This document shows, piece after piece, positions 1-17,892 of a DNA stretch of 34,048 nt. The position numbers and the translations under genes were made by a program. The stretch comes from Fonticula alba ATCC 38817. Lineage: Eukaryota > Protista > Nucleariida. Below the pieces are notes generated by a model. It was not told the origin of the DNA. It ran no database searches and worked only from the letters and a program-made list of their open reading frames with translations. Positions within the stretch are counted from its first letter, which is position 1; each line of letters starts with the position of its first letter. The DNA is taken from the NCBI GenBank assembly GCA_000388065.2, contig KB932208.1. One strand, given 5' to 3'.

Positions 1-3000
1 GCGTGCGTGGCCTGCTCGGCCAACTGCACGGCCTGCACCTCGACCAGCTCCTGCTCCGCCTGCCTGCCGGATCACTACGTGCATCTGGGCGCCTGTGTGT
101 CCTCCTGCCCGAGCGGCTTCTTTGTGTCCGGCGGGAGTTGCAAGGCCTGCTCGGCCAACTGCACGGCCTGCTCCTCGGCCACGGCCTGCACCACCTGCGC
201 CTCGGGCTACCTGAAGCACAATGATGCCTGCGTGTCGGCCTGCCCGGTGGGCTACTTCGCGGATGGGCCAGCCTGCTCGGCCTGCTCGGCCAACTGCAAT
301 GAGTGCACCTCGCCGAGCGTGTGTACCAATTGCAAGAGCAACTTCTTCCGGCACAACAACGCCTGTGTGTCCTCCTGCCCGAGCGGCTTCTTCGGCAGCG
401 GCAGTGTGTGCTCCTCGTGCTCCGGCAACTGCGACACCTGCACCTCCGGCAGCCACTGCACCACCTGCGCCGCGGGCTACCTGATGCACAACAGCGCCTG
501 TGTGGCCTCCTGCCCGGGGGGCTTCTTCAAGGATGGGGCCATCTGCTCGGCCTGCTCCAGTGGCTGCGGGTCCTGCACCTCGGCCAGCTCCTGTGGCGTT
601 TGCTTGCCGGGTTTCTTCCTGCACCATGGCGCCTGCGTGGGCTCCTGCCCGACGGGCTCCTTTGTGGAGGGCTCCCAGTGCACGGACTGCTCGGCCAACT
701 GCGCTGTCTGCACTTCGCCGACCTCCTGCACCACCTGCTCGGCCGGGAACTACCTGCACAACGGGGCTTGCGTGGCCACGTGCCCGTCGGGGTTCTTCTC
801 CGGCAGCGGCCGGTGCACGGCCTGCTCCAGCCATTGCACGGCCTGCTCCTCGGCCAGCAACTGCACTGCCTGCGCCGCGCCCCACTACCTGCACAATAGG
901 GCCTGCGTGGACAGCTGCCCGGCCGGGTTCTTCCCGGATGGGGCCCGGTGTGCCGGCTGCCCGGACACCTGTGCCTCCTGCACTTCCACCTCCAGCTGTG
1001 TTTCCTGCCTGCCGGGCTTCTCCCTGTTCGAGGGCCGATGCTTGTCCGCCTGCCCGGAGGGCTACTTCGACACCGGGGCCGAGGAGGGCGCCTGCGAGCC
1101 GTGTCTGCTGGGCTGCCGCGAGTGCAAGGCCGTCGACCGGTGTGGCCGGTGCCGGCTGGATCTCCTGGTGCTGGAGGGCGGTCCGGATGAGCCGGACCGG
1201 TGTGTGGCCAACTGCCCGGTGGGGCTGGCGGCCCAGGGCGACCGGTGCGTCGGCTGCGGCCCGGACTGCGCCGCCTGCTCCACTCCCGAGCAGTGTGACA
1301 CCTGCCATGGGGGCTTCCTCCTGCATGGAGATGCCTGTGTGGCATCGTGCCCGGGCGGGTTCTTCGCTTCCAATGGAGCATGCCTGGCCTGCTCGGACAA
1401 TTGCGACGCCTGCACCTCGGCCAGCAACTGCACGACCTGCCTGGGCGGGTACCTTCGCCATGCGGGGGCCTGTGTGGCCGCCTGCCCGGCGGGGTTCTTC
1501 CCTTCCGCCGGGGCATGCCAGAGCTGCTCGGCCCATTGCACCGCCTGCGCCTCGGTGGCCACCTGCACGGTGTGTGCCCCGGGCCATTACCTGCACCAGG
1601 GGGCCTGTGTGGCCGCCTGCCCGGCGGGGTTCTTCCCCTCCGGCGGGGCCTGTGCCGCCTGCTCGGCCCATTGCGACACCTGCGCCTCGGACACCCACTG
1701 CACCGTCTGTGCCCCGGGGTACCTGATGCATGGTGGTGCCTGTGTGGGCTCCTGCCCGACGGGCTTCTTTGCCGATGGCCCCACCTGCGCGGCGTGCTCG
1801 GCCGACTGCGCCAAGTGCACCTCGGCCAGTGTCTGCACCGCTTGCGATGTCGGGTCGCTCCTGCACAGGGGGGCCTGTGTGGGCGCCTGTCCGGGGGAGT
1901 TTTTCCCGCTGCAGGATACCTGCCAGGCTTGCCCGGAGCATTGTGACACGTGTGCCTCGGCCGATGCCTGTGACACCTGCCTGGTGCCGTACCTGCTGCA
2001 TGAGGGGGCCTGCCTGAGCAGTTGCCCGGTTGGCACGTTTGCCGACCCCACGGGCGTGTGTGCCGGCTGCCCGGCCGGGTGTGACGTTTGCACGGCCGGC
2101 GACCGGTGCGACCGCTGTGCCGGGGCCCTGGCCCTGCTGGAGGGGCGCGAGTGCGTCGGGTCCTGCCCGGTGGGTTACTTCCGCCAGGAGGGCACCATCC
2201 ACACGTGTGAGCCCTGCCATCCGCTGTGCGCCGCTTGCTTCGGGCCCGGGGCCTATGACTGCACGGCCTGCCCGCAGCCGTTGGTCATTCGCCAGCCCAT
2301 CCCGCCGGTGGTGCCGGCCCTGACCGAGGGCCCGTGCGTGCCGGATTGCCTGAACGACCCGTCGCAGTGCGCCGAGTGCGAGGACAATTGCGACCTCTGC
2401 CGGGCCCTGCCCAATGATGATACCTACTGTTTGGCCTGCAGCGAGCCGGGGCTGGCGCTGGATGGTAAGTGTGTGGAAAGTTGCCCGGCCGGCCATGCGC
2501 CGATGGTGGCGGCTGGCTATTGTGCCCGCTGCTCCGGGGCATGTGGCGATGCGTGCACCGGCTCCGGCAGCAACCAGTGCCTCAACTGCCCGCCGGGGAA
2601 GCTCCTCCAGGGGGGCGAGTGCCGTGACGCCTGCGCGGCCACCGGCTGGTTCCAGTCTTCGCCGAGCACCTGCACCCGGTGCGACAGCACCTGCCTGCAG
2701 TGTGTCGGCACCGGGCCCACCGACTGTGTCACCTGCCCCCGGGGGTCCTTCCGTTTGTCCCCGTCCGAGGGTCTCGGCAGCCGGTGTGTGCCCACCTGCC
2801 CGGATGGCCAGTTCCCGGACCATGGGCAGGCCGCCTGCCAGGCGTGCTCGGCCGAATGTGCCACCTGCTCCGGCCCGGACACCTGCCTGACTTGCCGGCC
2901 GGGCGAGTGGCTGCTGCCGGACGGCGCCGGCTGTGTGGCCGCGTGCCCGGTCGGCATGGTGCCCCTGGAAAAGGGGGCCTCTCGCCAGTGTCTGGCCTGC

Positions 3001-4284
3001 TCGGCCGGGTGCGTCGACTGCCGCCTGGACCCGCAGGAAGCCGCCCGCTGTGCCCAGTGCGAGGATGGCCTTCTGCTGCAGGTGTCGGGACAGTGCGCGG
3101 CCGGCTGTCCGGCCAGGCAATTCGATGAGGCTGGCGCCTGCCGGGCATGCGATGTGCAGTGTGCCCAGTGCCAGGGTGCCAGCAGCCACTGCACCGGGTG
3201 CGCCCAGCCGACCCCCCTGCTGCGCCCGGATGCCGGCCAGTGTGTGAGCAGCTGCCCTTCGGGCGAGGTCCAGGCCCCGGGCGATGGTGGCACTTGCCTG
3301 CCCTGTGACCCGGGGTGTGCCGAGTGCAGCGCCCCGGGGGATCCCCAGGCATGCACCGCCTGCCCATCGGCCTGGCATCTGCTCCGGGGCGCCTGTGTCG
3401 AGGCCTGCCCCGAGGCGCACTTCTCGGATGTCGGCACTTGCCGGGCCTGCCATGAGGATTGCCTTGCGTGCACGGGCCCCAGCTCGAAGGAGTGCCTGGC
3501 TTGCCGGGCGCCCGGGCTGCTGGTGCTGAATGGAGCGTGTGTTGACCGGTGCCCGGAGGATGGGTTCTGGCTCGACACCGAGGCCGCCACCTGCCGGGCG
3601 TGCGTCAGCGGATGCACCGTCTGCGAGCAGGGAGCCTGCTCGGCGTGCCAGGCGGACCTGGTGCTGCTCGAGGACCGGGTGCCCTCCTGCCTGTCGACCT
3701 GTCCGCCGGGGATGTTTGCCGACCGGGCTGGGGACCACAGCCGGGCTTCCTCCCGGTGTGTGGCCTGTGCCGAGGACTGTCACACGTGCTCCGGGCCGGA
3801 GCCCGGTCAGTGCGAGCTGTCCTGGTGCCAGGCCGAGGGGACGTGCTCGCGTTCGGGTGCGCCTTTTTCTTTTGATCTCCCTGCATATGTCGCATTTTTC
3901 CCGCCGCCTCGCTCGCCCCTTTCTCTCTCTCTCTCTCTCTCTCGCTCGCTCGCTGAGGGCGGCTCGTGCCTTGTCTCTGACTCCCGGGAATCCCCTCCGC
4001 CGGGGGAACTTGCCTTCAGCTCGCTCGGTGGTCCTGGGCGTGGCGGTCGGCGTGTCGGTGGGGCTGCTGCTGCTGTTGATCATCCTGATCGTGGTGTTTG
4101 CGGTCTGCCGTCGGCGCTACGCGACTGGCCTGGTGAAGGCCGCCGTCGAGGATGTGCGTCTTCCTCTTTGCAAGGGGGCCGGCCTCCCCCGGCCCCGCGT
4201 GTCGGCCATTCCCGGGCTCCTCGTTTTTTTTTGTCCGCCGGTGCCCTGGCAACTGACCTTTTCTCTGCCTTCTCTCTCAAACAC

Positions 4285-4330
<46 letters not shown>

Positions 4331-6282
4331 CAGGACGCCGACCGGACGGTCATGAACACCATGCTCGGTACGCCCTCCCCTCCCCGGGTCTCCTTGTGCC
4401 TGTCCTCCGGTGCTGCTGTGCTCTGGCATCATGTGCCCGGTGGGGCGAATGCCGCGGGCGCAAGGGCGCCGGGTTGGTGCATGGTGCTCTCCTGTCCTTT
4501 TTGCCGCCACCCGTGTCTAATTTCCGCCCCCTTCCATTTTGGCGCACACCGTGTGGCAGATCTCTCGATGCCGGGGTTCATGTTGTGCTCCTTCCATGAG
4601 GACATCCGCCTGGATGAGGCCAGTGGGGACATCGGCTCCGGCACGCAGGCGGCCATTGTTTCCGCCACCGCGCTCAAGCCGTCGCTGGTGAAGTTGGCTG
4701 GCAGCTCGCCGATTGTGGTCAAGTGTCTGCACAGTGCGTGTCGCCGGGGCGGGGGCCTCTTGCCCTCTCTTTCCTCTTCCTCTCTTCCTCTCTCCCTTTC
4801 TCTCGCACGCGCGTTCGTGTTGTCTCCGCTGAAAAGCTAACATGTGCCACCTGCCGGATCAGACGCCGACAAGCCTGACTTGCTCCCATCGGACCCGCTG
4901 TTGGCCATGTTCCGGAATGAGCTGTCGATCATTTGGTGCGTTCCCTTTTTCCCGGCCGCACGCCGGAGCAGGGGTGATTTTTTTTTTTTTTGATGTTGGG
5001 CCCCATGCTGCTGGAGAGCCGGCTTCTCTGACATCGCGCCATGTTGGCCCGGCAATGTCCCCCCCCCCCCCCCCGTGCAGGGCCCTGCAAGCTTCGCCGA
5101 ATGTGGTTCGCCTGCTTGGCTACTGCGAATCGCCCGCGGCGATGATCCTGACCCGCGAGCCAACCGACCTGCATCGGCTCCTGAACCGCGAGGAGCCCAT
5201 CTCCATGGAGGACTCGCGTGCGCTTCTGCATGGGCTGTGTACGTGCCTCGAGGGGCCTTCCCACCTTGAGCATCGCTCTGTCCTCGGCTCTCCCCCCCCC
5301 CCCCCTCCCTCGCTNNNNNNNNNNNNNNNNNNNNNNNNNNNNNNNNNNNNNNNNNNNNNNNNNNNNNNNNNNNNNNNNNNNNNNNNNNNNNNNNNNNNNN
5401 NNNNNNNNNNNNNNNNNNNNNNNNNNNNNNNNNNNNNNNNNNNNNNNNNNNNNNNNNNNNNNNNNNNNNNNNNNNNNNNNNNNNNNNNNNNNNNNNNNNN
5501 NNNNNNNNNNNNNNNNNNNNNNNNNNNNNNNNNNNNNNNNNNNNNNNNNNNNNNNNNNNNNNNNNNNNNNNNNNNNNNNNNNNNNNNNNNNNNNNNNNNN
5601 NNNNNNNNNNNNNNNNNNNNNNNNNNNNNNNNNGGCCGGGCGCCTCTTGCTTTCTTGCCCTTCTCCGGTTGATTTCCCTTCCCTTCCTTCCGCCACCTCG
5701 ATTTGCGGTCCTCCTCACCTGCCATTCGGCCGCGGTTGTTTGGCACATCCATTGACGCTGTCCTTCCCGCCGTGGCAGATCCTGCGGACCTTCGGCCAGC
5801 CGTCCGTCGCCCTGCTGGCCATTGACCACATGGCGGCCGACGTCTATTCCCTGGGCTCGGTCGTGTGGCATGTGCTGACGCATGAGCGCCCGTGGACCGG
5901 TATGTTTTGAATGCTGCCTCCGACTGCCTGCTTGCCGTGACCCGCCGATGTGCCGTGTGTTCCCCTCCCCCCCCCCCTGGGGGGGCCGAGCCGTGAGCTG
6001 ACTGTGTCTGTCCCTTTCCCGTGTGTGCTGCTCTCCCCCCCCCCCCCCTCTCGCCCGTGTCCTGGGCCGGTCGGTCGGACTTCAGGCCTCAGCCAGGACT
6101 CCGTGGTGGCCAGTGTGGTTGGTGGCCAGCTGCCCAGCTCGCACGGCTCCCCGCCGGTGGCTGACACCGGTGACGCCCTGGTGGCTTGGGCCTTGGCCAC
6201 TCTTCCCGGCATGTGGCACCTGGAGCCGATGCGGCGCCCGAAACTGGCCAGCCTCGCGGCCGAATGCCAGGCGCAAGCATGA
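1..6282 (+). CDS. Receptor-like Ser/Thr (TKL-like) kinase with long furin-like Cys-rich ectodomain, 5'-truncated. Exons <1-3856, 4020-4153 (TM), 4334-4367, 4560-4733, 4863-4935, 5081-5238, [gap 5315-5633], 5779-5899, 6086-6282
   Basis: About 1280 aa of CxxCxxxCxxC...C...C repeats in frame +1. GT..AG junctions keep the frame into TM helix RSVVLGVAVGVSVGLLLLLIILIVVFAVCRRR, then kinase motifs IGSGTQAAI, IVVK, RNELSIIW, NVVRLLGYCESP and AADVYSLGSVVWHVLTHERPW; stop TGA at 6280-6282. The catalytic loop and DFG region are presumably in the gap. Confidence 0.88.
3921..3944 (+). repeat. (CT)n microsatellite in intron
   Basis: Direct reading. Confidence 0.85.
4280..4324 (+). repeat. (CA)n microsatellite in intron
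   Basis: Direct reading. Confidence 0.9.
5315..5633. other. Assembly gap (N run)
   Basis: N bases; likely hides kinase subdomains VI-VIII of gene 1. Confidence 1.
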
Positions 6283-7059: not shown

Positions 7060-7141
7060 ATCACCGTGTCCGAGTGGTTAAGGAGTCCGATTAGAAATCG
7101 GATGGGCTCTGCCCGCGTAGGTTCAAATCCTGCCGGTGATG
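7060..7141 (+). tRNA. tRNA-Ser-AGA: tRNA-Ser(AGA)
   Basis: Acceptor ATCACCG/CGGTGAT, anticodon arm TCCGA-TTAGAAA-TCGGA, long variable arm GGGCTCTGCCC, GGTTCAAATCC T-loop, T-run about 10 nt downstream. Confidence 0.96.
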
Positions 7142-7404
7142 CATCTGCCTTCTTTTTGACTGGCAAGGGACCCTTGCGCCCCGCCGGGCGGGGGAAAGGC
7201 CTCGCTTTTGGTGTGCCGGGCGCGTGGTCGATGCTCCCGCGTTCCGGGCGGCGGATGTCTCTCCGTGGCCGCCCCTCTGTGTTTTGTCTCTTCGCCGATG
7301 GCGTTGTTGTGTATGCTTGTTTGGTTTTATGATGCGGACCTCTGGGAGGAGGAACGCGTGGGCAAGATTGATGAAACACCCGGGAGCAGGGATATCTATT
7401 CGCT

Positions 7405-7477
7405 TCCCATATAGTCTAGGTGGTTAGGATACGTGGCTCTCACCCACGAGACCCGGGTTCGAGTCCCGGTATGGGAA
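7405..7477 (+). tRNA. tRNA-Glu-CTC: tRNA-Glu(CTC)
   Basis: Acceptor TCCCATA/TATGGGA, anticodon arm CGTGG-CTCTCAC-CCACG, GGTTCGAGTCC, downstream TTTT. Confidence 0.96.
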
Positions 7478-7585
7478 TATCTTTTGGTCCCTTGGGTGCG
7501 GGCTCCCTTTTGTGTCTCCGCGACTTTTTTCGCGTCTTCCCGTTTCGGGAGCAGGCTTCGGGTGTGAGGGGCGAAAGTGGCAGGG

Positions 7586-7619
7586 CGGCGGCGGCGGCGG
7601 CGACGGCGGCGGCGGCGGC
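7586..7619 (+). repeat. (GGC)n trinucleotide repeat
   Basis: Direct reading. Confidence 0.8.
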
Positions 7620-7934
7620 AGCGAGAGGTGACCTGGAGGGGACCCGGGGGTAAGCCGCGTCGGCAGGGGGGGCCCGGTGCGCGTGTGGCGGCCATCGGAT
7701 GGCGTCGCAGAGGCCGTCCGGGCTCCGGAGGCGGGGCGGCGGACGCTGTGCATATATTTATAGTTATTTTCCCGGGAGCAGGTACCGGAAGCGCCGGGGG
7801 GACACTTCGCAGGAAGGGCAAGGTCGGAGCCTTGGGCACTTCCTTTGGGCGGGGGAGGGGGCCAACGGGCGGGGTCGTGTATCGGGAACCGCAGAGGGGA
7901 CATTTGGGAAAAGTGTGAGGCGCTTTCTCACGGA

Positions 7935-8004
7935 GGCCCCATAGCTCAGTTGGTTAGAGCGTCGTGCTAATAACGCGAAGGTCGTCAGTTCGATCCTGGC
8001 TGGG
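7935..8004 (+). tRNA. tRNA-Ile-AAT: tRNA-Ile(AAT), last few bases lost in gap
   Basis: GGCCCCATAGCTCAGTTGGTTAGAGC, anticodon arm TCGTG-CTAATAA-CGCGA, AGTTCGATCCT; runs into N gap. Confidence 0.93.
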
Positions 8005-8464
8005 NNNNNNNNNNNNNNNNNNNNNNNNNNNNNNNNNNNNNNNNNNNNNNNNNNNNNNNNNNNNNNNNNNNNNNNNNNNNNNNNNNNNNNNNNNNNNNNN
8101 NNNNNNNNNNNNNNNNNNNNNNNNNNNNNNNNNNNNNNNNNNNNNNNNNNNNNNNNNNNNNNNNNNNNNNNNNNNNNNNNNNNNNNNNNNNNNNNNNNNN
8201 NNNNNNNNNNNNNNNNNNNNNNNNNNNNNNNNNNNNNNNNNNNNNNNNNNNNNNNNNNNNNNNNNNNNNNNNNNNNNNNNNNNNNNNNNNNNNNNNNNNN
8301 NNNNNNNNNNNNNNNNNNNNNNNNNNNNNNNNNNNNNNNNNNNNNNNNNNNNNNNNNNNNNNNNNNNNNNNNNNNNNNNNNNNNNNNNNNNNNNNNNNNN
8401 NNNNNNNNNNNNNNNNNNNNNNNNNNNNNNNNNNNNNNNNNNNNNNNNNNNNNNNNNNNNNNNN
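8005..8464. other. Assembly gap (N run)
   Basis: N bases. Confidence 1.
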
Positions 8465-9483: not shown

Positions 9484-9555
9484 TCCCGATTAGTATAGTG
9501 GTGAGAATCCCCGCCTGTCACGCGGGAGGCCCGGGTTCAATTCCCGGATCGGGAG
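9484..9555 (+). tRNA. tRNA-Asp-GTC: tRNA-Asp(GTC), copy 1
   Basis: Acceptor TCCCGAT/ATCGGGA, anticodon arm CCCGC-CTGTCAC-GCGGG, GGTTCAATTCC, TTTTT terminator. Confidence 0.97.
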
Positions 9556-10569
9556 ATCCTTTTTGACCCGATCATATCGGCGAAGTGGGCCGCCCGATGC
9601 GGCGCGAGCCTTTTTCTTGCGCCCCCTTTGCCGCGCTCCCCCCCGTGCGCACTGGCACCCCCCCGCCCGATGGCGAGACGCATGCCGTCGCAGATCCCGG
9701 GCAATCGGCACCCCGGCGCAGCGCCATCCCCGAGGACCGAGCATGCCGGCCTCGGGGGGCAGGCGCCCCGAGGATCCCCCCCCCCCCCCCCCCGGTGCGC
9801 CGGCCGAGGAGGGTCGCGCGCCGCGTGTTTCCCCCCTCCCAGAGGGGCTGGGTAAGGTGCCTTGCACCGGGGACACGGGGTGGGGGTCCTCAGACTCGAA
9901 GAGTACGCTGCTCCGCCGGGCTCCGGTGCTCCGGGCCCCGGGTGTCGGTCCCTGCTCCCCACACAGCACTGGCCGAACAGGGGGGCCGAGGTTTTTAAGC
10001 TTCCATGAATGTGGCCGGCTCGAGGCTCTTGGCAGCCCTGTTCGAAGGTGTATCACCTCCCCAAGCGCTCGATGGGACACCTGCCGCCCTGCTCCGCCCC
10101 CTTCCCGCCATATTGGAAGCAAGCATATGCTGCGGGCTGGGTGTGGGCGGGTCTTTTGAACGACCGTCGCGGGCATGGGGGGGCGGTGCCCGGCTCGTGG
10201 CCCCCAGCCTCACTGGAGGAAAGGCGAAACAACACCCTCCAAGCCAATGGAGACCCACCGCTCGGCGGTGCTCAAGGTGTTGACTCTGTGCCGGACCCTG
10301 CGCCGGGTAGGGGGAGGGCGCCGAAAAGGCGAAGCCGGGCCAGTACCCGCGTGTGTGTGTGTGTGTGTGCGCCTCACGGCTGCGCGCCCCCTGTGTCCCT
10401 CCTTAGTGCCTCTTTTCTCCCCCGGTGGTGGAGATGGCAGCCACCGGCACGCAGACAGGCTGCTCTCCACAAGAACAAGACACGACCCCTCCCCTGCCCA
10501 GGCTCCGCTCTCTTTGGGAGAGGGGCACGCTCCCGGATCCCAGACCGCGGCCCGGGCAAAAGAGAAGGA

Positions 10570-10642
10570 AGCCCACTGTGGGGCTCGAACCCACGACCCT
10601 GGGATTAAGAGTCCCATGCTCTACCAACTGAGCTAAACAGGC
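10570..10642 (-). tRNA. tRNA-Lys-CTT: tRNA-Lys(CTT), copy 1
   Basis: Reverse complement GCCTGTTTAGCTCAGTTGGTAGAGCATGGGACTCTTAATCCCAGGGTCGTGGGTTCGAGCCCCACAGTGGGC; anticodon arm TGGGA-CTCTTAA-TCCCA. Confidence 0.96.
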
Positions 10643-10767: not shown

Positions 10768-10828
<61 letters not shown>

Positions 10829-10847
10829 CGTGTGTGTGTGTGTGTGT
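10768..10847 (+). repeat. (TG)n microsatellite just 3' of the minus-strand gene
   Basis: Direct reading. Confidence 0.92.
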
Positions 10848-10905
10848 ATTTGCCTGCGAGCTGCCCGAATGAGGGAGGGCAGGCAGAGGGGAGGCAGAGG
10901 GTCTG

Positions 10906-13900
10906 TCACTGCAGGAGGATGACCAGCTGGTGCAGGGTACGGAAGAGGAGCTGGACATTGGCCGGGTGGAACACGCCGCAGGCGACCTCCCGATGGTCAG
11001 GCCCGAGCATGTGCTCCACCGAGAGGACGAGTTTGACACCGTGGAAGTCCACCTCCCGGCGCTGGCGGGGCAAGAAGAAGAAGATGGACACGCGTCAGAG
11101 ATGGCGGGGGCACCCATGCGGCGAGTGTGGTGGTACTCCCTGTCGGGGCCGGGATGCGACTCGAGAAGGGAGGCGCGGCCGGCGCGCGCGCAGGGGAAAA
11201 AAAAAACAAAGCGCCCGAAGGCCGGGGGAAGGCCGTTGCCCTCGCCGGCCCCCGGGCGGCCGATGTATGTACCTCGAATTGGACAAGGGTCTGATCGGCG
11301 AAAATCCCAAAGAACAGGGCCACCAGATCCTGGCGGGGCAGATGCAGCGGCTCGACCTGGAGACCCGAAACGGAGGGGGAAACCCGCACGCGGGCAATTG
11401 CCACCCCCGGCGGCGGACGGACCACTTCCATGGTGACGATGCCCTCGCTTGGCAGGAGCCCGGCAAAGTGGTGGCTCATCTGGATCTCGGCGTCCTGGTC
11501 GTGGGCGGCCGAGAGCCTGGCCAGGGGGGCGGGGGGGGGGGGGGAGCGGCTTCGGGGTGAGTTGCGGGATGGGCCGGCGACCGAGGGATCCGGGCAGGGG
11601 GCGGGGCTTCGAGCAAAAGCGGGCGAGAAACGGAAAAAAGGACAAAGGCGACAGGGGCAACCCACCGGGCCAGGAAAAGGTGTTGAGCAAGGCGGAAGAA
11701 GACCGGGTCGCGTGGGCCCGCCGAGGCGGGCCCCGGCAGCCGGGCAAGCATGCAGCTCGGCATGCGCAGCCCCCGGTACAGGAGCGTCGGCATCGGGACA
11801 AGACGCAGGCCGGCTGCCAGGCTGAAGCCCGCACGCCGGCGGCTGGTCAGGAGGACGGTCGGCCGATTGCCGAGGATGGCCATGGATGCGGGTGGGTGTG
11901 AAGCTTGGAAGTGGAAGGATGTCCGCTCGCGGGACAGGACCCCGGCTCGGGTGCATGCGTCGCTGGTGGCAACCAGCTGCGCCGCGCTGACAGTCCACTG
12001 GCCATGCCGCGTGGTGATGTTGTATTCCTGCGGCCGGTCAGCCGGCCACCGGGGGGGCGCGGGTGTTTGGCACGGGCACATGCCGGTCAGGGGAAGAAGC
12101 CGGCCGGGGGCGCCAGAGCGGGGAAGGCGGGAGGGCAGCGAGGCATGGTGAAGGGGCAGGGCCAGCGGCGACGCACAAGGCCCATCTGCAGAGGCACGCC
12201 GTCGGAGAAGCAGTGGAGCATCAGCTCCCGGAGGTTTTGATGATGGACACATGGCTTGCCCGAGAGCCCGGGCATGGACACATGGATGTGGGCAAAGACA
12301 ATTTCCTCGATGTCGGTGCAGTATTCCAGGAGGAACTCCGGGTCGCCGGGCCCAAATGGCAGGGCTTCCATGTCGAAGTGCACGCCGTTGACGGGCGGAA
12401 TGCAGGTGTCCGCGGTGCCGGGGCTGGGGCAGGGGCCCGGGGGGGGGGGGGGGGGGGCGGGTAAGCAAACACGCAAACACGCGTACACACATGCACACGG
12501 GGGAGCCCGCGGGGGGCGGGGCCCCAAGGGGCAGGGCACCGGCGTGCGCAACGAACCGAAGGAGGAAGGCCCGATTGCGAAGTCGCACATAGTGGCGGCT
12601 GCCTCGGGGCAGGGCCGAGTGGTGTTCCAGCAGCTGGTATGTTTCCGGGGCCAGGAGCATCAGGCCACGGTGGCCGTGGGGGCCGTTGTCATTTTGGTAC
12701 ATGGAGCCGAGCTCGGCCGGGGCCGCCTCGTAGAAGAGCCGCAGGGGGGCCGGGCTGGCCGCGGCGGTGAGGCCCACCGGCCCGGGAAGCCGGAGGAGCG
12801 CGCTCCGGGGATCCCCAATGAGCGAGAGGGTCATGGGTTGCCCCTGTGAAGAGTCCGTTCGGAGGGAGAACCGGAAGCGGCATGACCGGTCCCTGGTGGC
12901 ATTGGATGGGAGGTAGGCCGATGTGAGAGGCTGCATATGCTGATCGACCATCGAGGTCGGCGTGACGACGAGCCAACGGGACAGCTGGATGAAGAAGGGC
13001 TGCCGAGCGAGAGGGAGGGCGGGGGCGGGGGCATCAGTGGAGGCCCGGGGAGGGGGGCAGGAGGGGGAGGGGAACCATCCGACGGGGGAGAGGGGACAAA
13101 GGGCATCATGCCATCACCCTGCCGAGCTCAATCCCCGGCAATGGAACGGCAAGGTGGGCGACCACCAGGCAGGCGGCTCTTTTCGCGGCCGGCCCCGCCA
13201 CTCAGACCCCCGAGGGGCATCTGCGCCGACATACCTGGCCGACATTCAGAACCGAGCAGTGCGGCGACCAGAAGCAGTCTCTCTCGATCACTTCGTGATT
13301 CAGCCGACCGAGCAGCTGGTCCTGGGGGTCCGCCAGGGCGATGGAGCACTCGATGGTCGTGGCGGCCGGCGCGTGGGCGGCGATGTGGGCACGCGCCCAG
13401 GGGCGCCCGGAGGGGAGCCCGGGGAAGCCGCCGTCAAGCAGCCGAACGCGGCCCTCGGCCAAGGTGGACCGGGGATTCTCATCGGGGCTGCCGGGGAGGG
13501 GGGGAGGGGGCCGGTCAGATGCGGCCGCGCGAGAAGGATCCCCGGGGCGGGCGGGGGGGGGGGGGGGGGGGGAAGGAAAGGGCCCGGTCGCCGGCGCACG
13601 GAGAGTCGGACGAACGCACGACAAAATCGAGAACCACTGGCCGACTTGGAGAAAAATATCCACTCCCGTCACATGGGGAGCCATCATGCGAATGTACCGG
13701 TAGGTGTTCGGGTGGACGAATGTCCGGCCGGCGAGGCGCTGGTGCTGAGCTCGGGCCGGGAAGGATGCACCGGAGGGCATGGGCTGAATGTCGACCGCCA
13801 GGGCCAGGGGCACGTCCGGCTCATCGAAGTGCAGGTAGAAGAGCGGCACGTCCGCCGGCGGGCCGGGGGCATGGGAAGGCAGGAGGGCGACGCGGGTGGC

Positions 13901-16166
13901 CGGGGCGCCGGCCACCCGGCCAAGGGGAGCCGGCTGGGCGTCCTCCGGCCAGCGCATGCGCTCGACCCGGGCCGGGAGCGAGGCGCCCTCCGGGCCGGGG
14001 ATGGCATATGTCTGGCACAGGGCATGGGGTGAGCTTGGCCCGGGGGGGCGTGGCGAAGGCCGAGTGGGGTTTTTTTATTTTCCCCCTTGAGCCCCATGTG
14101 CCCGCAGGCACATGTCGGCGGCGGGAGGGACGAAAGGCACGCACCTCGCCGAGCATCAAGGGGAGGTCCGACAAAGCGGCCAAGGCCGCCTGCACATCGA
14201 CGGGGCCCAGGCTCTCGGGGCCGAGCATGCGCAGGGTGAGCTCGGCCAGCGTGCGCGGCCGGGTGGTCCGCTCGAAGAGCAGCGGCTCGCCATCGTCCCA
14301 GCGGATGGCCGCCGCACTGTCCGAGTGGAGGAGGATCTCATGCTCGGCTGCCTGATCGTCGGAGCTGCGCGCGCGCAGGCCGGCGGGCGGGGGAGGGGGG
14401 ACCAGTCAGCGGGCGGGCCTCGGAGGGGGGCGGGGAAAGAGGCACGGACTTCAGGAGGAAGAACTCCCGATGCCGGGAGAAGTAGAGCCGGGAGGAGGCC
14501 GGCGGTGCCAGCTTCCGGCGCAGGAGGCCCATGGCCCCGGGCGAAAGGAGAGCCTCCCCGCGGCGGGGGCGATCGGAAATGACCACGCGTGCCAGGAGCA
14601 GCAGGGCTCCCGCGTCGATGAGCGACACGGCGGCCGGGACCGCGGGCAGACGGGGGACAAGCGCCTGGAGGAGGAGGGCCGCCCGGCCGGTGGCCACATC
14701 CTCCGGGGTGAATGCTCCGGCGGGCAGCGGATTCCCCTCGTGGTCTTGAAGGAGGGCAACCTCGCCGCACAGGCCCGGCAGGCTGATGGCCTGGCCGGTG
14801 CATAGGGCGAGGCAAATGCCCGACAGGCGTGAGTGCGGGCATTGATGTGTGGACGGCAGTGTGCCTCCATCGATCGACCAATGGATATACATGTGTGTGT
14901 GTGTGTGTGTGTGCGCGCGCGAGCAGGTACGGGTGTGTGCGTGTGTGTATGTGTGAGGGAGCCGCCCAGCCGGGCAGGCTCTCGTGGCGCCTGATCGCAC
15001 CTGGCCGAGGGACAGCGGGACGCCGGTGAAGTGCTGGAGGAAGGTGGCCTCGATGTCCGGCCGGAGGGTGGCCCCGGAGGACGCATGCAGGCGGAGGAGG
15101 GCCATGCGCAGAGCCGGGGGCCGGGGAGCTGGCATGAAGGTGAGCTGCGGATGGCGAGAGGGCGGGAAGAGGGAGTCCAGGTCGTCGGGGTGGGCGAAGA
15201 GGGTCCGCTGGGCCGGGGGCTCGGCCAGGGCCACGGTCCGCACGACAAAGGCCCGGCCTGCGTGGACGAAGTAGGGCTCATGCTCGGCATGCTGCAATGG
15301 CGTGGTGTCCGCGACAAAGAGGACGCCCGGGTAGAGGCGCGACCGGAGGGGCTCGGCCATGTAGAAGAGCGGGCCGGAGGGCGTGTCCAGCAGGGCCATG
15401 CGCTGGGTGCCGCGGACTCGCAGCCACGGGGGGAGGGCGAAAAAAAGCCGCGTCCCCGGGCCAAAGACCCCGACGGACAGGGGCCGGTGGGAGCCCTGCT
15501 CGCGCAAGGCGTCAAACGAAAGGCCGAGCTGGTGCCCGAGCACATGGGCCGGCAGGACCTAGGGCACCGTGTGTCGATGCGAGGCCGAGGGGAGGGGGGG
15601 GGGGGGCGGGCGAGGGGGTGAGCATGGTGGCGCGGCGGGAAGGGGGGCCGGCATGGCCTGGGGCCCGGCCGGTCGGCAGGCTGGCGTACCCTGCCGGTCG
15701 GGACGGGCATGCCCGGAGGCCATGGGGAGAGGTCGCCGGCCGAGAGCACCGCCGCGGGCCGGGGGGCCGGCCCGGCGGCGGCGGGATCCCCCAACGGGCC
15801 CGGAAGATCCACGGTGACACGCAGGTACTCGACGACCGGCGGGTCGGACACCATTTCCAGCTCCAAGCGATCGGTCCCCGGGGGGCAGAGCCGATCGCGA
15901 TCCGCCGGACTGAGATACACCGAGGGGGCATCGTCCTGTGGGAGGGTGTCCAGGGCAATGAGGCATAGAAGCTGGGCCTGGCCGGCGCGAACGTAGCACC
16001 GGGCGAGCGAGCGGCCGTCGAGGGCTTGCCGGAGCAGGGCAGCCGGGCAGGCCAGCTCCCCGGCCGCCAGGAGCATCCCCGGCGGGGGGATCCCCAGCGG
16101 CAGGTCGACCACCGGCGGCCCGGGGCCGGGCACGGGGCGGATCACCACGTGCGGGACCCGGGCCAT
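10906..16166 (-). CDS. ~1230-aa protein of six tandem NSF/CDC48 N-domain-like modules, no AAA domain. Exons (minus) 16166-15690, 15558-15001, 14790-14450, 14364-14145, 14011-13620, 13487-13235, 12999-12557, 12423-12177, 12027-11666, 11516-11273, 11061-10906
   Basis: Ten GT..AG introns (donors gtacgc, gtgcga, gtccgt, gtgcgt, gtgcgt, gtatgt, gttcgt, gtgcgt, gtgggt, gtacat) join into one open frame of 3693 nt from ATG (MARVPHVVIR) to TGA. Recurrent barrel-like motifs: VYLSPADRDRL, LFAHPDDLDSL, ILLHSDSAAAIRWDDGEPL, FVHPNTYRYI, LLAPETYQLL, IQMSHHFAGLL. Recurrent CDC48_2-like motifs: FLQHFTGVPLSLGQAISL, LSDLPLMLGETYAI, CFSDGVPLQMGLEYNI, FFGIFADQTLVQFERREVDFHGVKLVLSVEHM. The gene model is well supported; the fold call is by eye. 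Confidence 0.8.
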
Positions 16167-16629
16167 GGGGAGGAGCAGGGCCGGAGGTGGCAGCGGGCGG
16201 CGGCGGGAGAGGAGGAGGAGGAGTAGAGGTAGGGCAGATGGCAGAAGGGGGTCGGGGCAGATGGGCCGGGTGCCGGGCCACCGCTCGGGTGGGCTGGTCG
16301 CTCTTGTCGAGGGCCGGGGCCGGCATGCTCGCCCGGACGGACTCGCGGGGGGAGGTGACGTGTGTGTCTGTGTGTTGAGATGGCCCCTGTGAGCCGGGCG
16401 GGGACGCGAGCTCCGGGGGCCGAGGGAGCAGGGCGGATCTCGGCCGATCGACTGCCGGCCGCGGGGTCGGCACTTGGCCCGGCTCACCCGCGGCCTCGGG
16501 GGGGGTGGCCCGGTAGACGAGCCGGCTTTCGTGGGCTGAGTGGTCGAGCGGGGGAGCGCGCGCGCGCGCGATCGAAGGGCGCCCACAGGGGCATGTGGAA
16601 AAGTGATCTGGCAGCAAAAGGAAAGGAAT

Positions 16630-16702
16630 AGCCCACTGTGGGGCTCGAACCCACGACCCTGGGATTAAGAGTCCCATGCTCTACCAACTGAGCTAAACAG
16701 GC
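16630..16702 (-). tRNA. tRNA-Lys-CTT: tRNA-Lys(CTT), copy 2 (identical to copy 1)
   Basis: Same 73-nt sequence as 10570-10642. Confidence 0.96.
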
Positions 16703-17395
16703 TGTTCGAGAGAGGAGGGGGACGGCCGAATTTTTGATCCTGCCGCCGGGCGCGTCTCTTGTGGCGGGGTTCCAGGGGGCTGGCCGCGGCGGAACAGTGC
16801 GGGCGGGGGAGTCGGTCGGCATCCGGGCGGGCGGGGGGGGGGACATTGGGTCAAGATGCCGGAGGACGGGCACCGGCGCGCATGCCGGCAGTTCGGCCGA
16901 CTGCTCGACCGGCAGGGGCGCGGCAGGCGTTCTTCCTGTCCCAGGAGCGGGAGCCCAGGCCGGGGGAGGTCCGAGAGAGGGGCACATCCCCAGTCGGGGG
17001 CGGGGGTGCCCGGAAGGATGAAGTCCCCCCGCCCTGGCGAGCGGCGGTGCCGGAGGGGCGGGGCAGCAGCCTTTGCGATGCTGTTCTCTTGGCACATGTG
17101 CCATCGCCTGGGAGGCTCCTGCCGATGTGGGCGACAATGGGTGGCTGTGCCTCGGGGATGGCCCCCGGCGATGGGCGGGTACTTGGCCGGGGCCATCTTT
17201 TCGCCGGCCAACCGGGCATGGGCGCCCTGCGGCCGGTTTGTCGGAGGCTCCGACCGGGATGGCCGCGTGCATCGGCCGCGGGGGGAGAGGCCTGCGGGCT
17301 GGGGGGGGTGTGGGGGCCGGGGGGTGGGCGTGTCCTCGCGCCTCGTCAGGGCTCACGGATAAATGCATGTTCCACGGTCGGGCCTTCACATCCCA

Positions 17396-17467
17396 TCCCG
17401 ATTAGTATAGTGGTGAGAATCCCCGCCTGTCACGCGGGAGGCCCGGGTTCAATTCCCGGATCGGGAG
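17396..17467 (+). tRNA. tRNA-Asp-GTC: tRNA-Asp(GTC), copy 2 (identical to copy 1)
   Basis: Same sequence as 9484-9555, followed by TTTTTT. Confidence 0.97.
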
Positions 17468-17545
17468 ATCTTTTTTGGCAGGCGCTCGGCGCCCCGCCCC
17501 CTCGGCCCTCAGGATAAGTAGCCCGGTCTGGGCCGAGAGCCCCAT

Positions 17546-17619
17546 GGCCGCGTAGCTCAATTGGATAGAGCACCTGACTACGGATCAGGAGGTTGTGTGT
17601 TCGAGCCGCATCGTGGTCA
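17546..17619 (+). tRNA. tRNA-Arg-ACG: tRNA-Arg(ACG)
   Basis: Acceptor GGCCGCG/CGTGGTC, anticodon arm CCTGA-CTACGGA-TCAGG, GTTCGAGCC, T8 terminator. Confidence 0.95.
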
Positions 17620-17892
17620 ATGTTTTTTTTGTTGCCTCGCCAGGCGGGGCCGCCTCTGTCGCGGTCCTTCGGGGGTGAGGGTCCCCCGGTGCGAGGAGAG
17701 AGGGACCCGTCGATGGCGGTGGCCGGGCTTTTGTTGAGCCCGCCACAGGGTCCGCGCGGCGGGATGCCGCCGCCCGGGGGCGTTGTGCGGCCGGAGGGGG
17801 GGTGCTCTCTTCCTGGGACCCTCCACGCGGGCACCCCCTCACTTGGCCGAACCAGAAAAAACACACACACACATACGGCAGGGGACCCTTGA

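What the first reader, a model, noticed from the sequence alone, without database searches (positions are those of the whole stretch)
10906..16166. Single polypeptide of six tandem NSF/CDC48-type N-domains with no AAA ATPase: a possible one-chain mimic of the hexamer's N-tier
Seen in sequence: the spliced ~1230-aa protein divides into six ~200-aa modules (roughly 16166-15430, -14690, -13880, -12850, -11900, -10906). Each has a hydrophobic-(S/H/A)-P-x-x-x-x-x-L type segment, then a 'F..xP(L)xxG(Q/E)x(I/Y)x(I/L)' segment, then a terminal 'G.(F/V/L)...T.hydrophobic' strand. Module 6 (LVALFFGIFADQTLVQFERREVDFHGVKLVLSVEHM) reads most like the NSF/Sec18 N-domain. The chain stops right after module 6, and I found no Walker A (GxxxxGKT) in or downstream of it. 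Established: NSF/Sec18 and p97/CDC48 carry one N-domain (CDC48_N double-psi barrel + CDC48_2) per subunit and form hexamers, so six N-domains are displayed; these bind alpha-SNAP/SNARE or p97 cofactors. PEX1/PEX6 carry two N-domains each, attached to ATPases. Inference: an ATPase-less concatemer of exactly six N-domains could be a SNAP/cofactor decoy, scaffold or regulator of membrane fusion. I know of no described protein with this architecture but cannot verify novelty.
Basis: partly seen in the sequence, partly recalled or inferred. Interest (0 to 1): 0.92.

Follow-up and report, generated by a model that had tools for sequence, protein, structure and literature searches.

The report
Six N-domains, no ATPase motor
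Fonticula alba, an amoeboid relative of fungi, transcribes a 1230-residue protein made of six very diverged tandem copies of the two-lobed "N-domain" that normally sits on Cdc48/NSF-type ATPase motors, with no motor attached; I found no description of this layout, and its job is unknown.

Summary
On the minus strand, 16166-10906, lies an 11-exon, 3693-nt gene for a 1230-aa protein. All introns are GT..AG. RNA contigs show nine of the ten splice joints directly, and the transcript ends about 47 nt after the stop. There is no Walker A motif, and tRNA genes flank the gene on both sides.

The public record (Fonticula alba H696_05057, 757 aa) stops inside unspliced intron 6 and misses modules 5-6.

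Six modules of about 190-225 aa are real but very diverged:
- Profiles built from five modules recognise the sixth in five of six cases.
- All ten introns sit at two recurring module positions.

The N-domain fold is supported for modules 2-3:
- Protein-language-model neighbours are CDC48_N, CDC48_2, PEX-1N and UFD1 clusters.
- The ESM Atlas model of module 3 matches Cdc48 and Ufd1 N-domains at TM 0.56-0.69.
- No module passes a Pfam threshold, and my AlphaFold2 runs were poor.

Nothing ties the modules to NSF in particular. The hexamer-mimic idea is untested.

No homolog turned up in 1.8 billion cluster representatives. Earlier unchecked scan notes report similar genes on other scaffolds of this genome. 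This is a new architecture of a known domain.

The parts
10906..16166 (-). Coding span of the 11-exon gene (ATG 16166-16164, TGA 10908-10906); 1230-aa product
   Evidence: model; RNA contigs with spliced joints
15690..16166 (-). Exon 1 (aa 1-159)
   Evidence: the joint of intron 1 is seen in runs X1 and X2
15001..15558 (-). Exon 2 (aa 160-345)
14450..14790 (-). Exon 3 (aa 346-459, last codon split)
14145..14364 (-). Exon 4 (to aa 532)
   Evidence: the joint to exon 5 rests only on a 14-nt loose end in run X3
13620..14011 (-). Exon 5 (aa 533-663, last codon split)
13235..13487 (-). Exon 6 (to aa 747). The public model H696_05057 runs on from here into intron 6 and stops.
12557..12999 (-). Exon 7 (aa 748-895, last codon split); unannotated in the public record
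12177..12423 (-). Exon 8 (to aa 977); unannotated
   Evidence: the contig spanning exons 7-8-9 has exactly the right length
11666..12027 (-). Exon 9 (aa 978-1098, last codon split); unannotated
11273..11516 (-). Exon 10 (to aa 1179); unannotated
10906..11061 (-). Exon 11 (aa 1180-1230 plus stop); the transcript ends near 10859
15427..16166 (-). Module 1 (aa 1-203, includes intron 1)
   Evidence: leave-one-out profile: 0 of 500 shuffles reach it; motif reading
14656..15426 (-). Module 2 (aa 204-390, includes intron 2)
   Evidence: Atlas features point to CDC48_N / CDC48_2 / PEX-1N / UFD1; Pfam CDC48_2 E=0.065; 2 of 500 shuffles
13877..14655 (-). Module 3 (aa 391-577, includes introns 3 and 4)
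   Evidence: Atlas structure TM 0.56-0.69 to Cdc48 and UFD1 N-domains; VIA matches of its second lobe; 1 of 500 shuffles
12856..13876 (-). Module 4 (aa 578-795, includes introns 5 and 6)
   Evidence: 14 of 500 shuffles; intron positions
11899..12855 (-). Module 5 (aa 796-1020, includes introns 7 and 8)
   Evidence: 1 of 500 shuffles; second-lobe profile test, 0 of 1000 shuffles, at the right place
10909..11898 (-). Module 6 (aa 1021-1230, includes introns 9 and 10)
   Evidence: Only motifs and the two homologous intron positions. The profile test is not significant, 102 of 500.

Best explanation
Shown: this is a real, spliced, transcribed Fonticula alba gene. Its 1230-aa product has no signal-peptide-like N-terminus and consists of six tandem, strongly diverged homologous modules. 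It has no ATPase and no other recognisable domain. The ten introns sit at two recurring module positions, so the array most likely grew by tandem duplication of a two-exon unit.

Supported for modules 2-3, and extended to the others by internal homology: each module is a two-lobed N-domain of the Cdc48/NSF/Pex1/Ufd1 superfamily, a double-psi beta-barrel followed by a beta-clam.

Inferred: with no motor, the protein can only bind. I commit to an ATP-independent, multivalent adaptor or scaffold. Each module would hold a short peptide, beta-strand or ubiquitin-like partner in or near the cleft between its two lobes. This is how the ATPase-less N-domain of Ufd1 (UT3) holds ubiquitin and how the p97 N-domain holds cofactor motifs. 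Six such sites in one chain would give avidity for polymeric or multimeric partners. The Cdc48/ubiquitin system is the most likely partner, more likely than SNAP/SNARE.

Odds: architecture and fold class about 0.75; the binding-scaffold mechanism about 0.35.
For: - Gene model and transcription.
- No Walker A, no onward splice, tRNA genes on both sides.
- Module homology: leave-one-out profiles; end-to-end hhalign alignments at P=4e-4 for two of eight splits; collinear pairwise alignments that end exactly at homologous introns.
- Intron regularity.
- Fold, language-model features: neighbours of aa 160-345 and 374-565 are CDC48_N, CDC48_2, PEX-1N and UFD1 clusters, scores 0.88-0.91.
- Fold, Atlas model: aa 374-565 aligns over 148-171 residues at TM 0.56-0.69 to clusters carrying CDC48_N+CDC48_2 or UFD1_N1+N2, in 8 of 10 rows.
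- Fold, Pfam: CDC48_2 sub-threshold hit on the module 2 helix plus 'PLSLGQ' turn, E=0.065.
- Fold, AlphaFold2: the only moderately confident part of the module 3 model (pLDDT 57-73) is the second lobe. Among 48,161 PDB representatives its matches ranked 5, 6, 22 and 27 are the second lobes of UFD1 (2yuj), PEX1 (1wlf), Sec18 (1cr5) and NSF (1qdn).
- Precedent for binding without a motor: Ufd1 UT3 has the same two lobes and binds two K48-linked ubiquitins at a ridge and a cleft site (bioRxiv 10.64898/2026.03.07.710261).
- Lysine is scarce: 3 K in 1230 aa against about 12 expected from codon-position composition. Lysine deserts are described for ubiquitin-proteasome components (PMC10169902).
Against: - No module reaches a Pfam gathering score, and CDC48_N is never hit.
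- Sequence and profile searches of the PDB give only chance hits.
- The first lobe (double-psi barrel) is supported only by the low-confidence Atlas model (whole-protein pLDDT 0.54) and by motif reading.
- Modules 5 and 6 could not be given to any fold tool as intact domains. Module 6 fails the profile test. Exon 7 alone had no Atlas neighbours.
- No partner, localisation or ortholog is known, so the mechanism is inference only.
- Lysine is rare in this genome anyway: 0.78% in the neighbouring gene.
Confidence: 0.55

Rival explanations
1. The six modules reproduce in one chain the six N-domains displayed by an NSF or Cdc48 hexamer. The protein would then act as a decoy or regulator that soaks up alpha-SNAP/SNARE complexes or p97 cofactors.
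For: There are exactly six modules. Unchecked scan notes report other genes in this genome with five to six such modules, which would suggest the number is held constant. N-domain fold class.
Against: Nothing links the modules to NSF rather than to Cdc48 or Ufd1. In known hexamers the D1 ring, absent here, positions the N-domains (general knowledge). The modules are so diverged from one another that six equivalent binding sites for one ligand seem unlikely. No ligand-contact residues could be checked without a reliable model.
Confidence: 0.12
2. A detachable N-tier. The chain docks in trans onto a six-fold AAA ring that has no N-domains of its own and supplies its substrate- or adaptor-binding layer.
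For: The count of six. N-less members of the Cdc48 family exist in some lineages, for example plant Spaf-like (PMC5070193).
Against: There is no conserved N-D1 linker-like element. No precedent is known to me.
Confidence: 0.05
3. The modules are not N-domains. They would be a different repeated beta-rich fold, and the Cdc48/Ufd1 neighbours would be artefacts of low-confidence models and language-model features on a proline/alanine/leucine-rich orphan.
For: No Pfam or PDB sequence match passes threshold. AF2 models are poor, and Foldseek finds ACT, C2 and Ig-like folds at similar weak scores. The Atlas states that 4-10% of shuffled proteins reach a feature score of 0.9.
Against: Four independent weak signals point to the same superfamily: features for two different modules, the ESMFold structure, Pfam CDC48_2, and VIA on an AF2 model. 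The motif order fits both lobes in every module. N-domains are known to be poorly conserved, to the point that no single HMM covers them all (PMC5070193).
Confidence: 0.15
4. A young, fast-drifting lineage-specific gene with no maintained function, transcribed and spliced but effectively neutral.
For: It is an orphan: no homolog in 1.84 billion representatives, in a word-filtered search of the 5.8-billion-protein set (8000 candidates scored), or in JGI metagenomes. The modules are extremely diverged. RNA depth is modest.
Against: 1230 codons stay open across 11 exons; at this composition about 2% of random codons would be stops (my estimate). GC3 is 0.85 against GC2 0.50, a coding-type bias. 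All ten splice sites are intact and used. Hydrophobic strand patterns are kept in every module.
Confidence: 0.08

Closest known systems
Ufd1 UT3 domain (UFD1_N1 PF03152 + UFD1_N2 PF24842)
   Same: An N-domain-type two-lobed module (double-psi barrel plus alpha/beta lobe) that works with no ATPase in its own chain, purely by binding. UFD1 clusters are among the feature and structure neighbours of modules 2-3. 2yuj ranks 5th in the VIA search.
   Different: Ufd1 has one such domain followed by a UT6 region with Npl4- and Cdc48-binding motifs. Here there are six domains and no such tail. There is no detectable sequence similarity.
Pex1 / Pex6 tandem N-domains (N1-N2)
   Same: The only described case of consecutive N-domains in one chain (PMC5070193). 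Their second copies are likewise diverged beyond easy HMM detection. A PEX-1N cluster and 1wlf appear among the neighbours.
   Different: They have two copies, not six, always fused to D1-D2 AAA domains and working in a heterohexamer.
Cdc48/p97/VAT N-domain (CDC48_N PF02359 + CDC48_2 PF02933)
   Same: Best structural neighbours of module 3 (TM by query 0.56-0.58 over about 150 residues). Pfam CDC48_2 gives a sub-threshold hit on module 2.
   Different: One copy per chain, fused to two AAA domains. Pfam thresholds are not met here, and cofactor-binding residues could not be compared.
NSF/Sec18 N-domain
   Same: Same fold class. By eye, the motif 'helix - P-h-x-h-G-Q - strand - strand' resembles the second lobe of NSF-N. 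1cr5 and 1qdn rank 22 and 27 in the VIA search, aligned on their second lobes.
   Different: No evidence that NSF is closer than Cdc48, Ufd1 or Pex1. There is no D1/D2, and the SNAP-binding basic residues could not be checked.
Stand-alone N-domain proteins of archaea and giant viruses (ESM Atlas clusters of 140-250 aa with CDC48_N and/or CDC48_2)
   Same: ATPase-less proteins made only of N-domain lobes. They are the top feature neighbours of modules 2-3.
   Different: They are single modules, uncharacterised, and occur in unrelated lineages.

Membership tests
Cdc48/NSF-type N-domain (Pfam CDC48_N PF02359 + CDC48_2 PF02933) | Sequence match to the family HMMs above the gathering score | tested here: not met
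   No CDC48_N hit at E<=10 on any exon piece or on intact modules 1-4. CDC48_2 gives only 13.3 bits (cut-off 22.4, E=0.065), on module 2.
Cdc48/NSF-type N-domain (Pfam CDC48_N PF02359 + CDC48_2 PF02933) | Two-lobed fold: N-terminal double-psi beta-barrel followed by a beta-clam / alpha-beta lobe | tested here: met
   Met for module 3 only. The Atlas ESMFold model of aa 374-565 aligns over both lobes (148-171 residues, TM by query 0.56-0.69) to Cdc48 and UFD1 clusters. The second lobe is weakly backed by AF2 plus VIA. Whole-protein model confidence is low (pLDDT 0.54). Modules 1, 2, 4, 5 and 6 were not tested by structure.
Cdc48/NSF-type N-domain (Pfam CDC48_N PF02359 + CDC48_2 PF02933) | Two psi-loop elements ('hhh-x-P/S-x-x-h-x-x-L') separated by a beta-hairpin in the first lobe | tested here: inconclusive
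   Readable by eye in all six modules, for example aa 38-49 and 82-93 in M1, 223-234 and 278-289 in M2, and 425-435 and 468-479 in M3. A strict pattern finds only four, and no confident model confirms the loops.
Cdc48 family AAA ATPases (Cdc48, NSF, Pex1, Pex6, Spaf and others) | Tandem D1-D2 AAA domains with Walker A/B after the N-domain | tested here: not met
   No Walker A in the protein or nearby in any frame. The transcript ends about 47 nt after the stop. tRNA genes flank the gene.
Ufd1 | A single UT3 domain followed by UT6 with SHP/Npl4-binding motifs | tested here: not met
   Six modules fill the chain to its last residue, so there is no C-terminal tail. No UFD1 Pfam hit.
Internal tandem repeat protein (six homologous units) | The units are recognisably homologous to one another | tested here: met
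   Leave-one-out profiles: 0, 2, 1, 14, 1 and 102 of 500 shuffles reach the real score for M1-M6. hhalign gives P=4e-4 end to end for two splits. Intron phases and positions recur in each unit. M6 is supported only by introns and motifs.

The most novel reading that the evidence does not exclude
Six is not an accident. Fonticula would carry a family of single-chain 'hexa-N' proteins whose module number is held at six because each chain engages a six-fold partner. That partner could be an AAA ring, which the chain caps, replaces the N-tier of, or competes with, or a hexameric cofactor assembly. This would be a previously unknown, motor-less layer of regulation of Cdc48/NSF-type machines.
Probability: 0.1. 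Interest if true: 0.85.

Novelty: new variant of a known kind. Interest (0 to 1): 0.6.

Why it matters
N-domains are the parts of Cdc48, NSF and Pex1/6 machines that select substrates and adaptors. They are known as one copy per subunit, two in the peroxins, or as the single free copy in Ufd1. A chain of six with no motor would be a new way to use this module. It would give a natural test of what N-domains can do alone: avidity binding, ubiquitin handling, or competition with hexamers. It also shows how far the domain can diverge and still be recognisable.

There are two practical points. The public gene model of H696_05057 is truncated and lacks the last 483 residues. If the scan's other notes are right, the gene may belong to a lineage-specific family in the closest amoeboid relatives of fungi.

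Tried and rejected
- Pfam on ten exon pieces, on intact modules 1-4 and on second-lobe pieces: only one sub-threshold CDC48_2 hit.
- phmmer or profile searches of PDB sequences with exon 2, M1, M3, exons 8 and 10, and two module alignments: only chance hits, namely a decarboxylase, Lhca5, a response regulator and TGF-beta receptor kinase.
- Homolog searches found only the protein itself. These were an exhaustive phmmer of exons 2+3 against 1.84 billion representatives, word-indexed searches with P0001 and with the exon 7/9 reading frame, and a JGI metagenome scan. The three other hits match the translated intron.
- AlphaFold2 of aa 1-747 without an alignment gave pLDDT 33, and Foldseek against the PDB was meaningless.
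- AlphaFold2 of module 3 with modules 1, 2 and 4 as the alignment gave pLDDT 45. Foldseek against the PDB and Swiss-Prot, and the Atlas shape search, were not significant.
- A ten-row alignment that included fragments of modules 5-6 was misregistered, so I did not use it.
- Modules 5 and 6 as intact domains could not be submitted to any tool. The public protein stops at aa 747, every module there is split by introns, and I did not type long sequences.
- tblastn of the modules against the window and L001 found no further copy nearby.
- The apparent 4-kb 'joints' at 11545/15589 are poly-C/G artefacts, not splicing.
- A lysine-desert argument was considered but kept as a side note, because lysine is rare genome-wide.
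- The paralog family reported by earlier scan notes could not be fetched or tested.

Full report
**What is there**

The window is about 70% G+C eukaryotic DNA. Reading the minus strand between 16166 and 10906 in three frames, and joining at GT..AG sites, gives 11 exons. They total 3693 nt, that is 1230 codons plus TGA.

Public RNA contigs from three runs of the same organism lie on the exons and skip the introns.
- The joints of introns 1, 2, 3, 5, 6, 8, 9 and 10 are listed outright.
- One contig runs from exon 7 through to exon 11. It leaves exactly the 247+1 nt expected for exon 8 between its exon-7 and exon-9 pieces, so intron 7 is spliced as modelled.
- Intron 4 is backed only by a 14-nt loose end that matches the start of exon 5.
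- Coverage stops at about 10859, 47 nt past the stop codon and just before a (GT)40 microsatellite. It is zero at 16260-16459. So the mRNA begins shortly upstream of the first ATG and does not splice on to anything downstream.

Codon-position G+C is 0.75 / 0.50 / 0.85, against 0.73 in introns, which is a coding pattern.

**Source and annotation**

An exhaustive phmmer search with exons 2+3 returned one real hit, a 757-aa protein. It lies on scaffold KB932208.1 of GCA_000388065.2. That assembly is Fonticula alba (bioRxiv 10.1101/2023.12.07.570557), and the protein is named hypothetical protein H696_05057.

The public model equals my exons 1-6 and then reads ten residues into intron 6 and stops. 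No gene is called over exons 7-11. The RNA contigs show intron 6 spliced, so the true product is 1230 aa, and modules 5-6 are missing from the databases.

**No ATPase**

The protein has no Walker A, even in relaxed form. The only G....GK[ST] strings in any frame of the window lie 11 kb or more away. tRNA-Lys(CTT) genes sit 264 nt downstream and 463 nt upstream of the coding region.

**Six modules**

Simple pairwise scores between units are mostly at noise level. Only two pairs stand out, at z=6.7 and z=3.9. The alignments that do appear are collinear and end exactly at homologous introns.

I set module borders by the recurring elements: aa 1-203, 204-390, 391-577, 578-795, 796-1020 and 1021-1230. 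A profile built from five modules then scores the sixth above nearly all of its shuffles for M1-M5 (0, 2, 1, 14 and 1 of 500 shuffles reach it). It does not for M6 (102 of 500). A profile of the second-lobe region alone finds M2 and M5 at the right place. hhalign of module sub-alignments gives end-to-end matches at P=4e-4 for two of eight splits; the rest are not significant.

The introns give independent support.
- Six phase-0 introns follow aa 159, 345, 532, 747, 977 and 1179, each directly after a 'P-L-x-h-G-x' turn.
- Four phase-2 introns split codons 459, 663, 895 and 1098, each after a hydrophobic strand (FFLL, FSIL, AFLL, LFLA) and 73-84 aa before the next phase-0 intron.
- None of 200,000 random placements was as regular.

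The array therefore grew by tandem duplication of a two-exon unit. Modules 1-2 either lost the phase-2 intron or predate it.

**Fold**

Sequence methods do not reach it. Pfam gives nothing on exon pieces or on intact modules 1-4, apart from CDC48_2 at 13.3 bits (cut-off 22.4; E=0.065) on the helix-plus-turn of module 2. PDB sequence and profile searches give only chance hits. This is not unusual for N-domains: a survey of the Cdc48 family could not build one HMM covering all of them (PMC5070193).

Three other kinds of evidence agree with one another.
1. Language-model features. For exon 2 (aa 160-345) the nearest ESM Atlas clusters carry CDC48_N, CDC48_2, PEX-1N or UFD1 families (best score 0.91; 8 of the 10 best family-bearing hits fall in one clan). 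The same holds for aa 374-565 (0.86-0.89).
2. The Atlas's own model. The Atlas holds an ESMFold model of the 757-aa protein (pLDDT 0.54 overall). Its residues 374-565 align over 148-171 residues at TM 0.56-0.69 to clusters of Cdc48, VCP, archaeal CDC48, a 246-aa CDC48_N+CDC48_2 protein and UFD1. That is 8 of 10 rows.

Against this:
- Foldseek on both AF2 models found nothing significant.
- AF2 of aa 1-747 alone failed (pLDDT 33).
- Exon 7 alone had no Atlas neighbours.
- Modules 5-6 could not be submitted as intact domains at all.

My reading is that the N-domain fold class is likely, about 0.75. It is shown for module 3, probable for module 2, and extended to the others by homology. 'NSF-type' in particular is not established.

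**Relatives**

No homolog was found in 1.84 billion cluster representatives, in the 8000 word-sharing candidates scored from the 5.8-billion set, or in JGI metagenomes. There is no second copy in the window.

Earlier notes of this scan list at least eight other stretches on other pieces of the same genome that were read as five to six tandem N-domains without an ATPase. One was followed up with the same conclusion. I could not fetch those loci, so this is a lead, not evidence. If it is true, the paralogs are too diverged or too poorly annotated for phmmer to find.

**How it probably works**

With no nucleotide-binding domain the protein can only bind. The nearest working precedent is Ufd1. Its UT3 domain has the same two lobes, carries no ATPase, and holds two K48-linked ubiquitins at a ridge site and a cleft site. 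The p97 N-domain uses its cleft for SHP motifs (bioRxiv 10.64898/2026.03.07.710261).

I therefore favour a cytosolic, ATP-independent multivalent adaptor or scaffold with six diverged binding modules in series. It is more likely connected to the Cdc48/ubiquitin system than to SNAP/SNARE.

A small side observation fits this. Only three lysines occur in 1230 residues, against about 12 expected from the gene's own codon-position composition. Lysine deserts are described for ubiquitin-proteasome components (PMC10169902). But lysine is scarce in this genome generally.

In known hexamers the D1 ring positions the N-domains, and these six modules differ so much that six equivalent sites seem unlikely.

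**Novelty and verdict**

The known arrangements are: one N-domain per AAA subunit; two in Pex1 and Pex6 (PMC5070193); one free copy in Ufd1; and single stand-alone copies in some archaeal and giant-virus proteins. Full-text searches found no description of a multi-N, ATPase-less protein.

This is a new architecture of a known domain. The function is unknown. The scan has noted similar genes elsewhere in this genome.

Noticed in passing
window 12557-13234 and downstream to 10906: The public gene model H696_05057 (757 aa) fails to splice intron 6 and stops ten codons into it. Exons 7-11 (483 aa, modules 5-6) are unannotated, although RNA contigs cover them.
   Followed up: yes
window 9484-10642 and 16629-17620: The gene is boxed in by tRNA genes: Asp(GTC)+ and Lys(CTT)- on one side, and Lys(CTT)-, Asp(GTC)+ and Arg(ACG)+ on the other. 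The two Lys copies have identical Rfam scores, as do the two Asp copies. Four more tRNAs lie at 7060-8009.
   Followed up: partly
window 13746: All three RNA runs read C where the assembly has T on the + strand. On the coding strand this changes codon 621 from CAG (Gln) to CGG (Arg) at 100% of depth. A strain or assembly difference is more likely than editing.
   Followed up: partly
window 11524-11546 and 15589-15610: Poly-C/G tracts inside introns 9 and 1 produce false 4-kb 'joints' in the contigs. They also attract reads from the unrelated organism of run X12.
   Followed up: yes
whole protein (aa 438, 951, 1189): Only three lysines in 1230 residues (0.24%), against about 12 expected from codon-position composition, while Asn is as expected. 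Arg is 8.2%.
   Followed up: partly
window 7-4599 (+): A long open frame with 13 Furin-like_2 cysteine-rich repeats (E=6e-63) plus weaker Furin-like and GF_recep_IV matches. It looks like a large cysteine-rich surface or receptor-type protein.
   Followed up: no
window 10768-10847: A (GT)40 microsatellite lies immediately 3' of the transcript end. CA/TG-rich tracts also occur inside intron 2.
   Followed up: no
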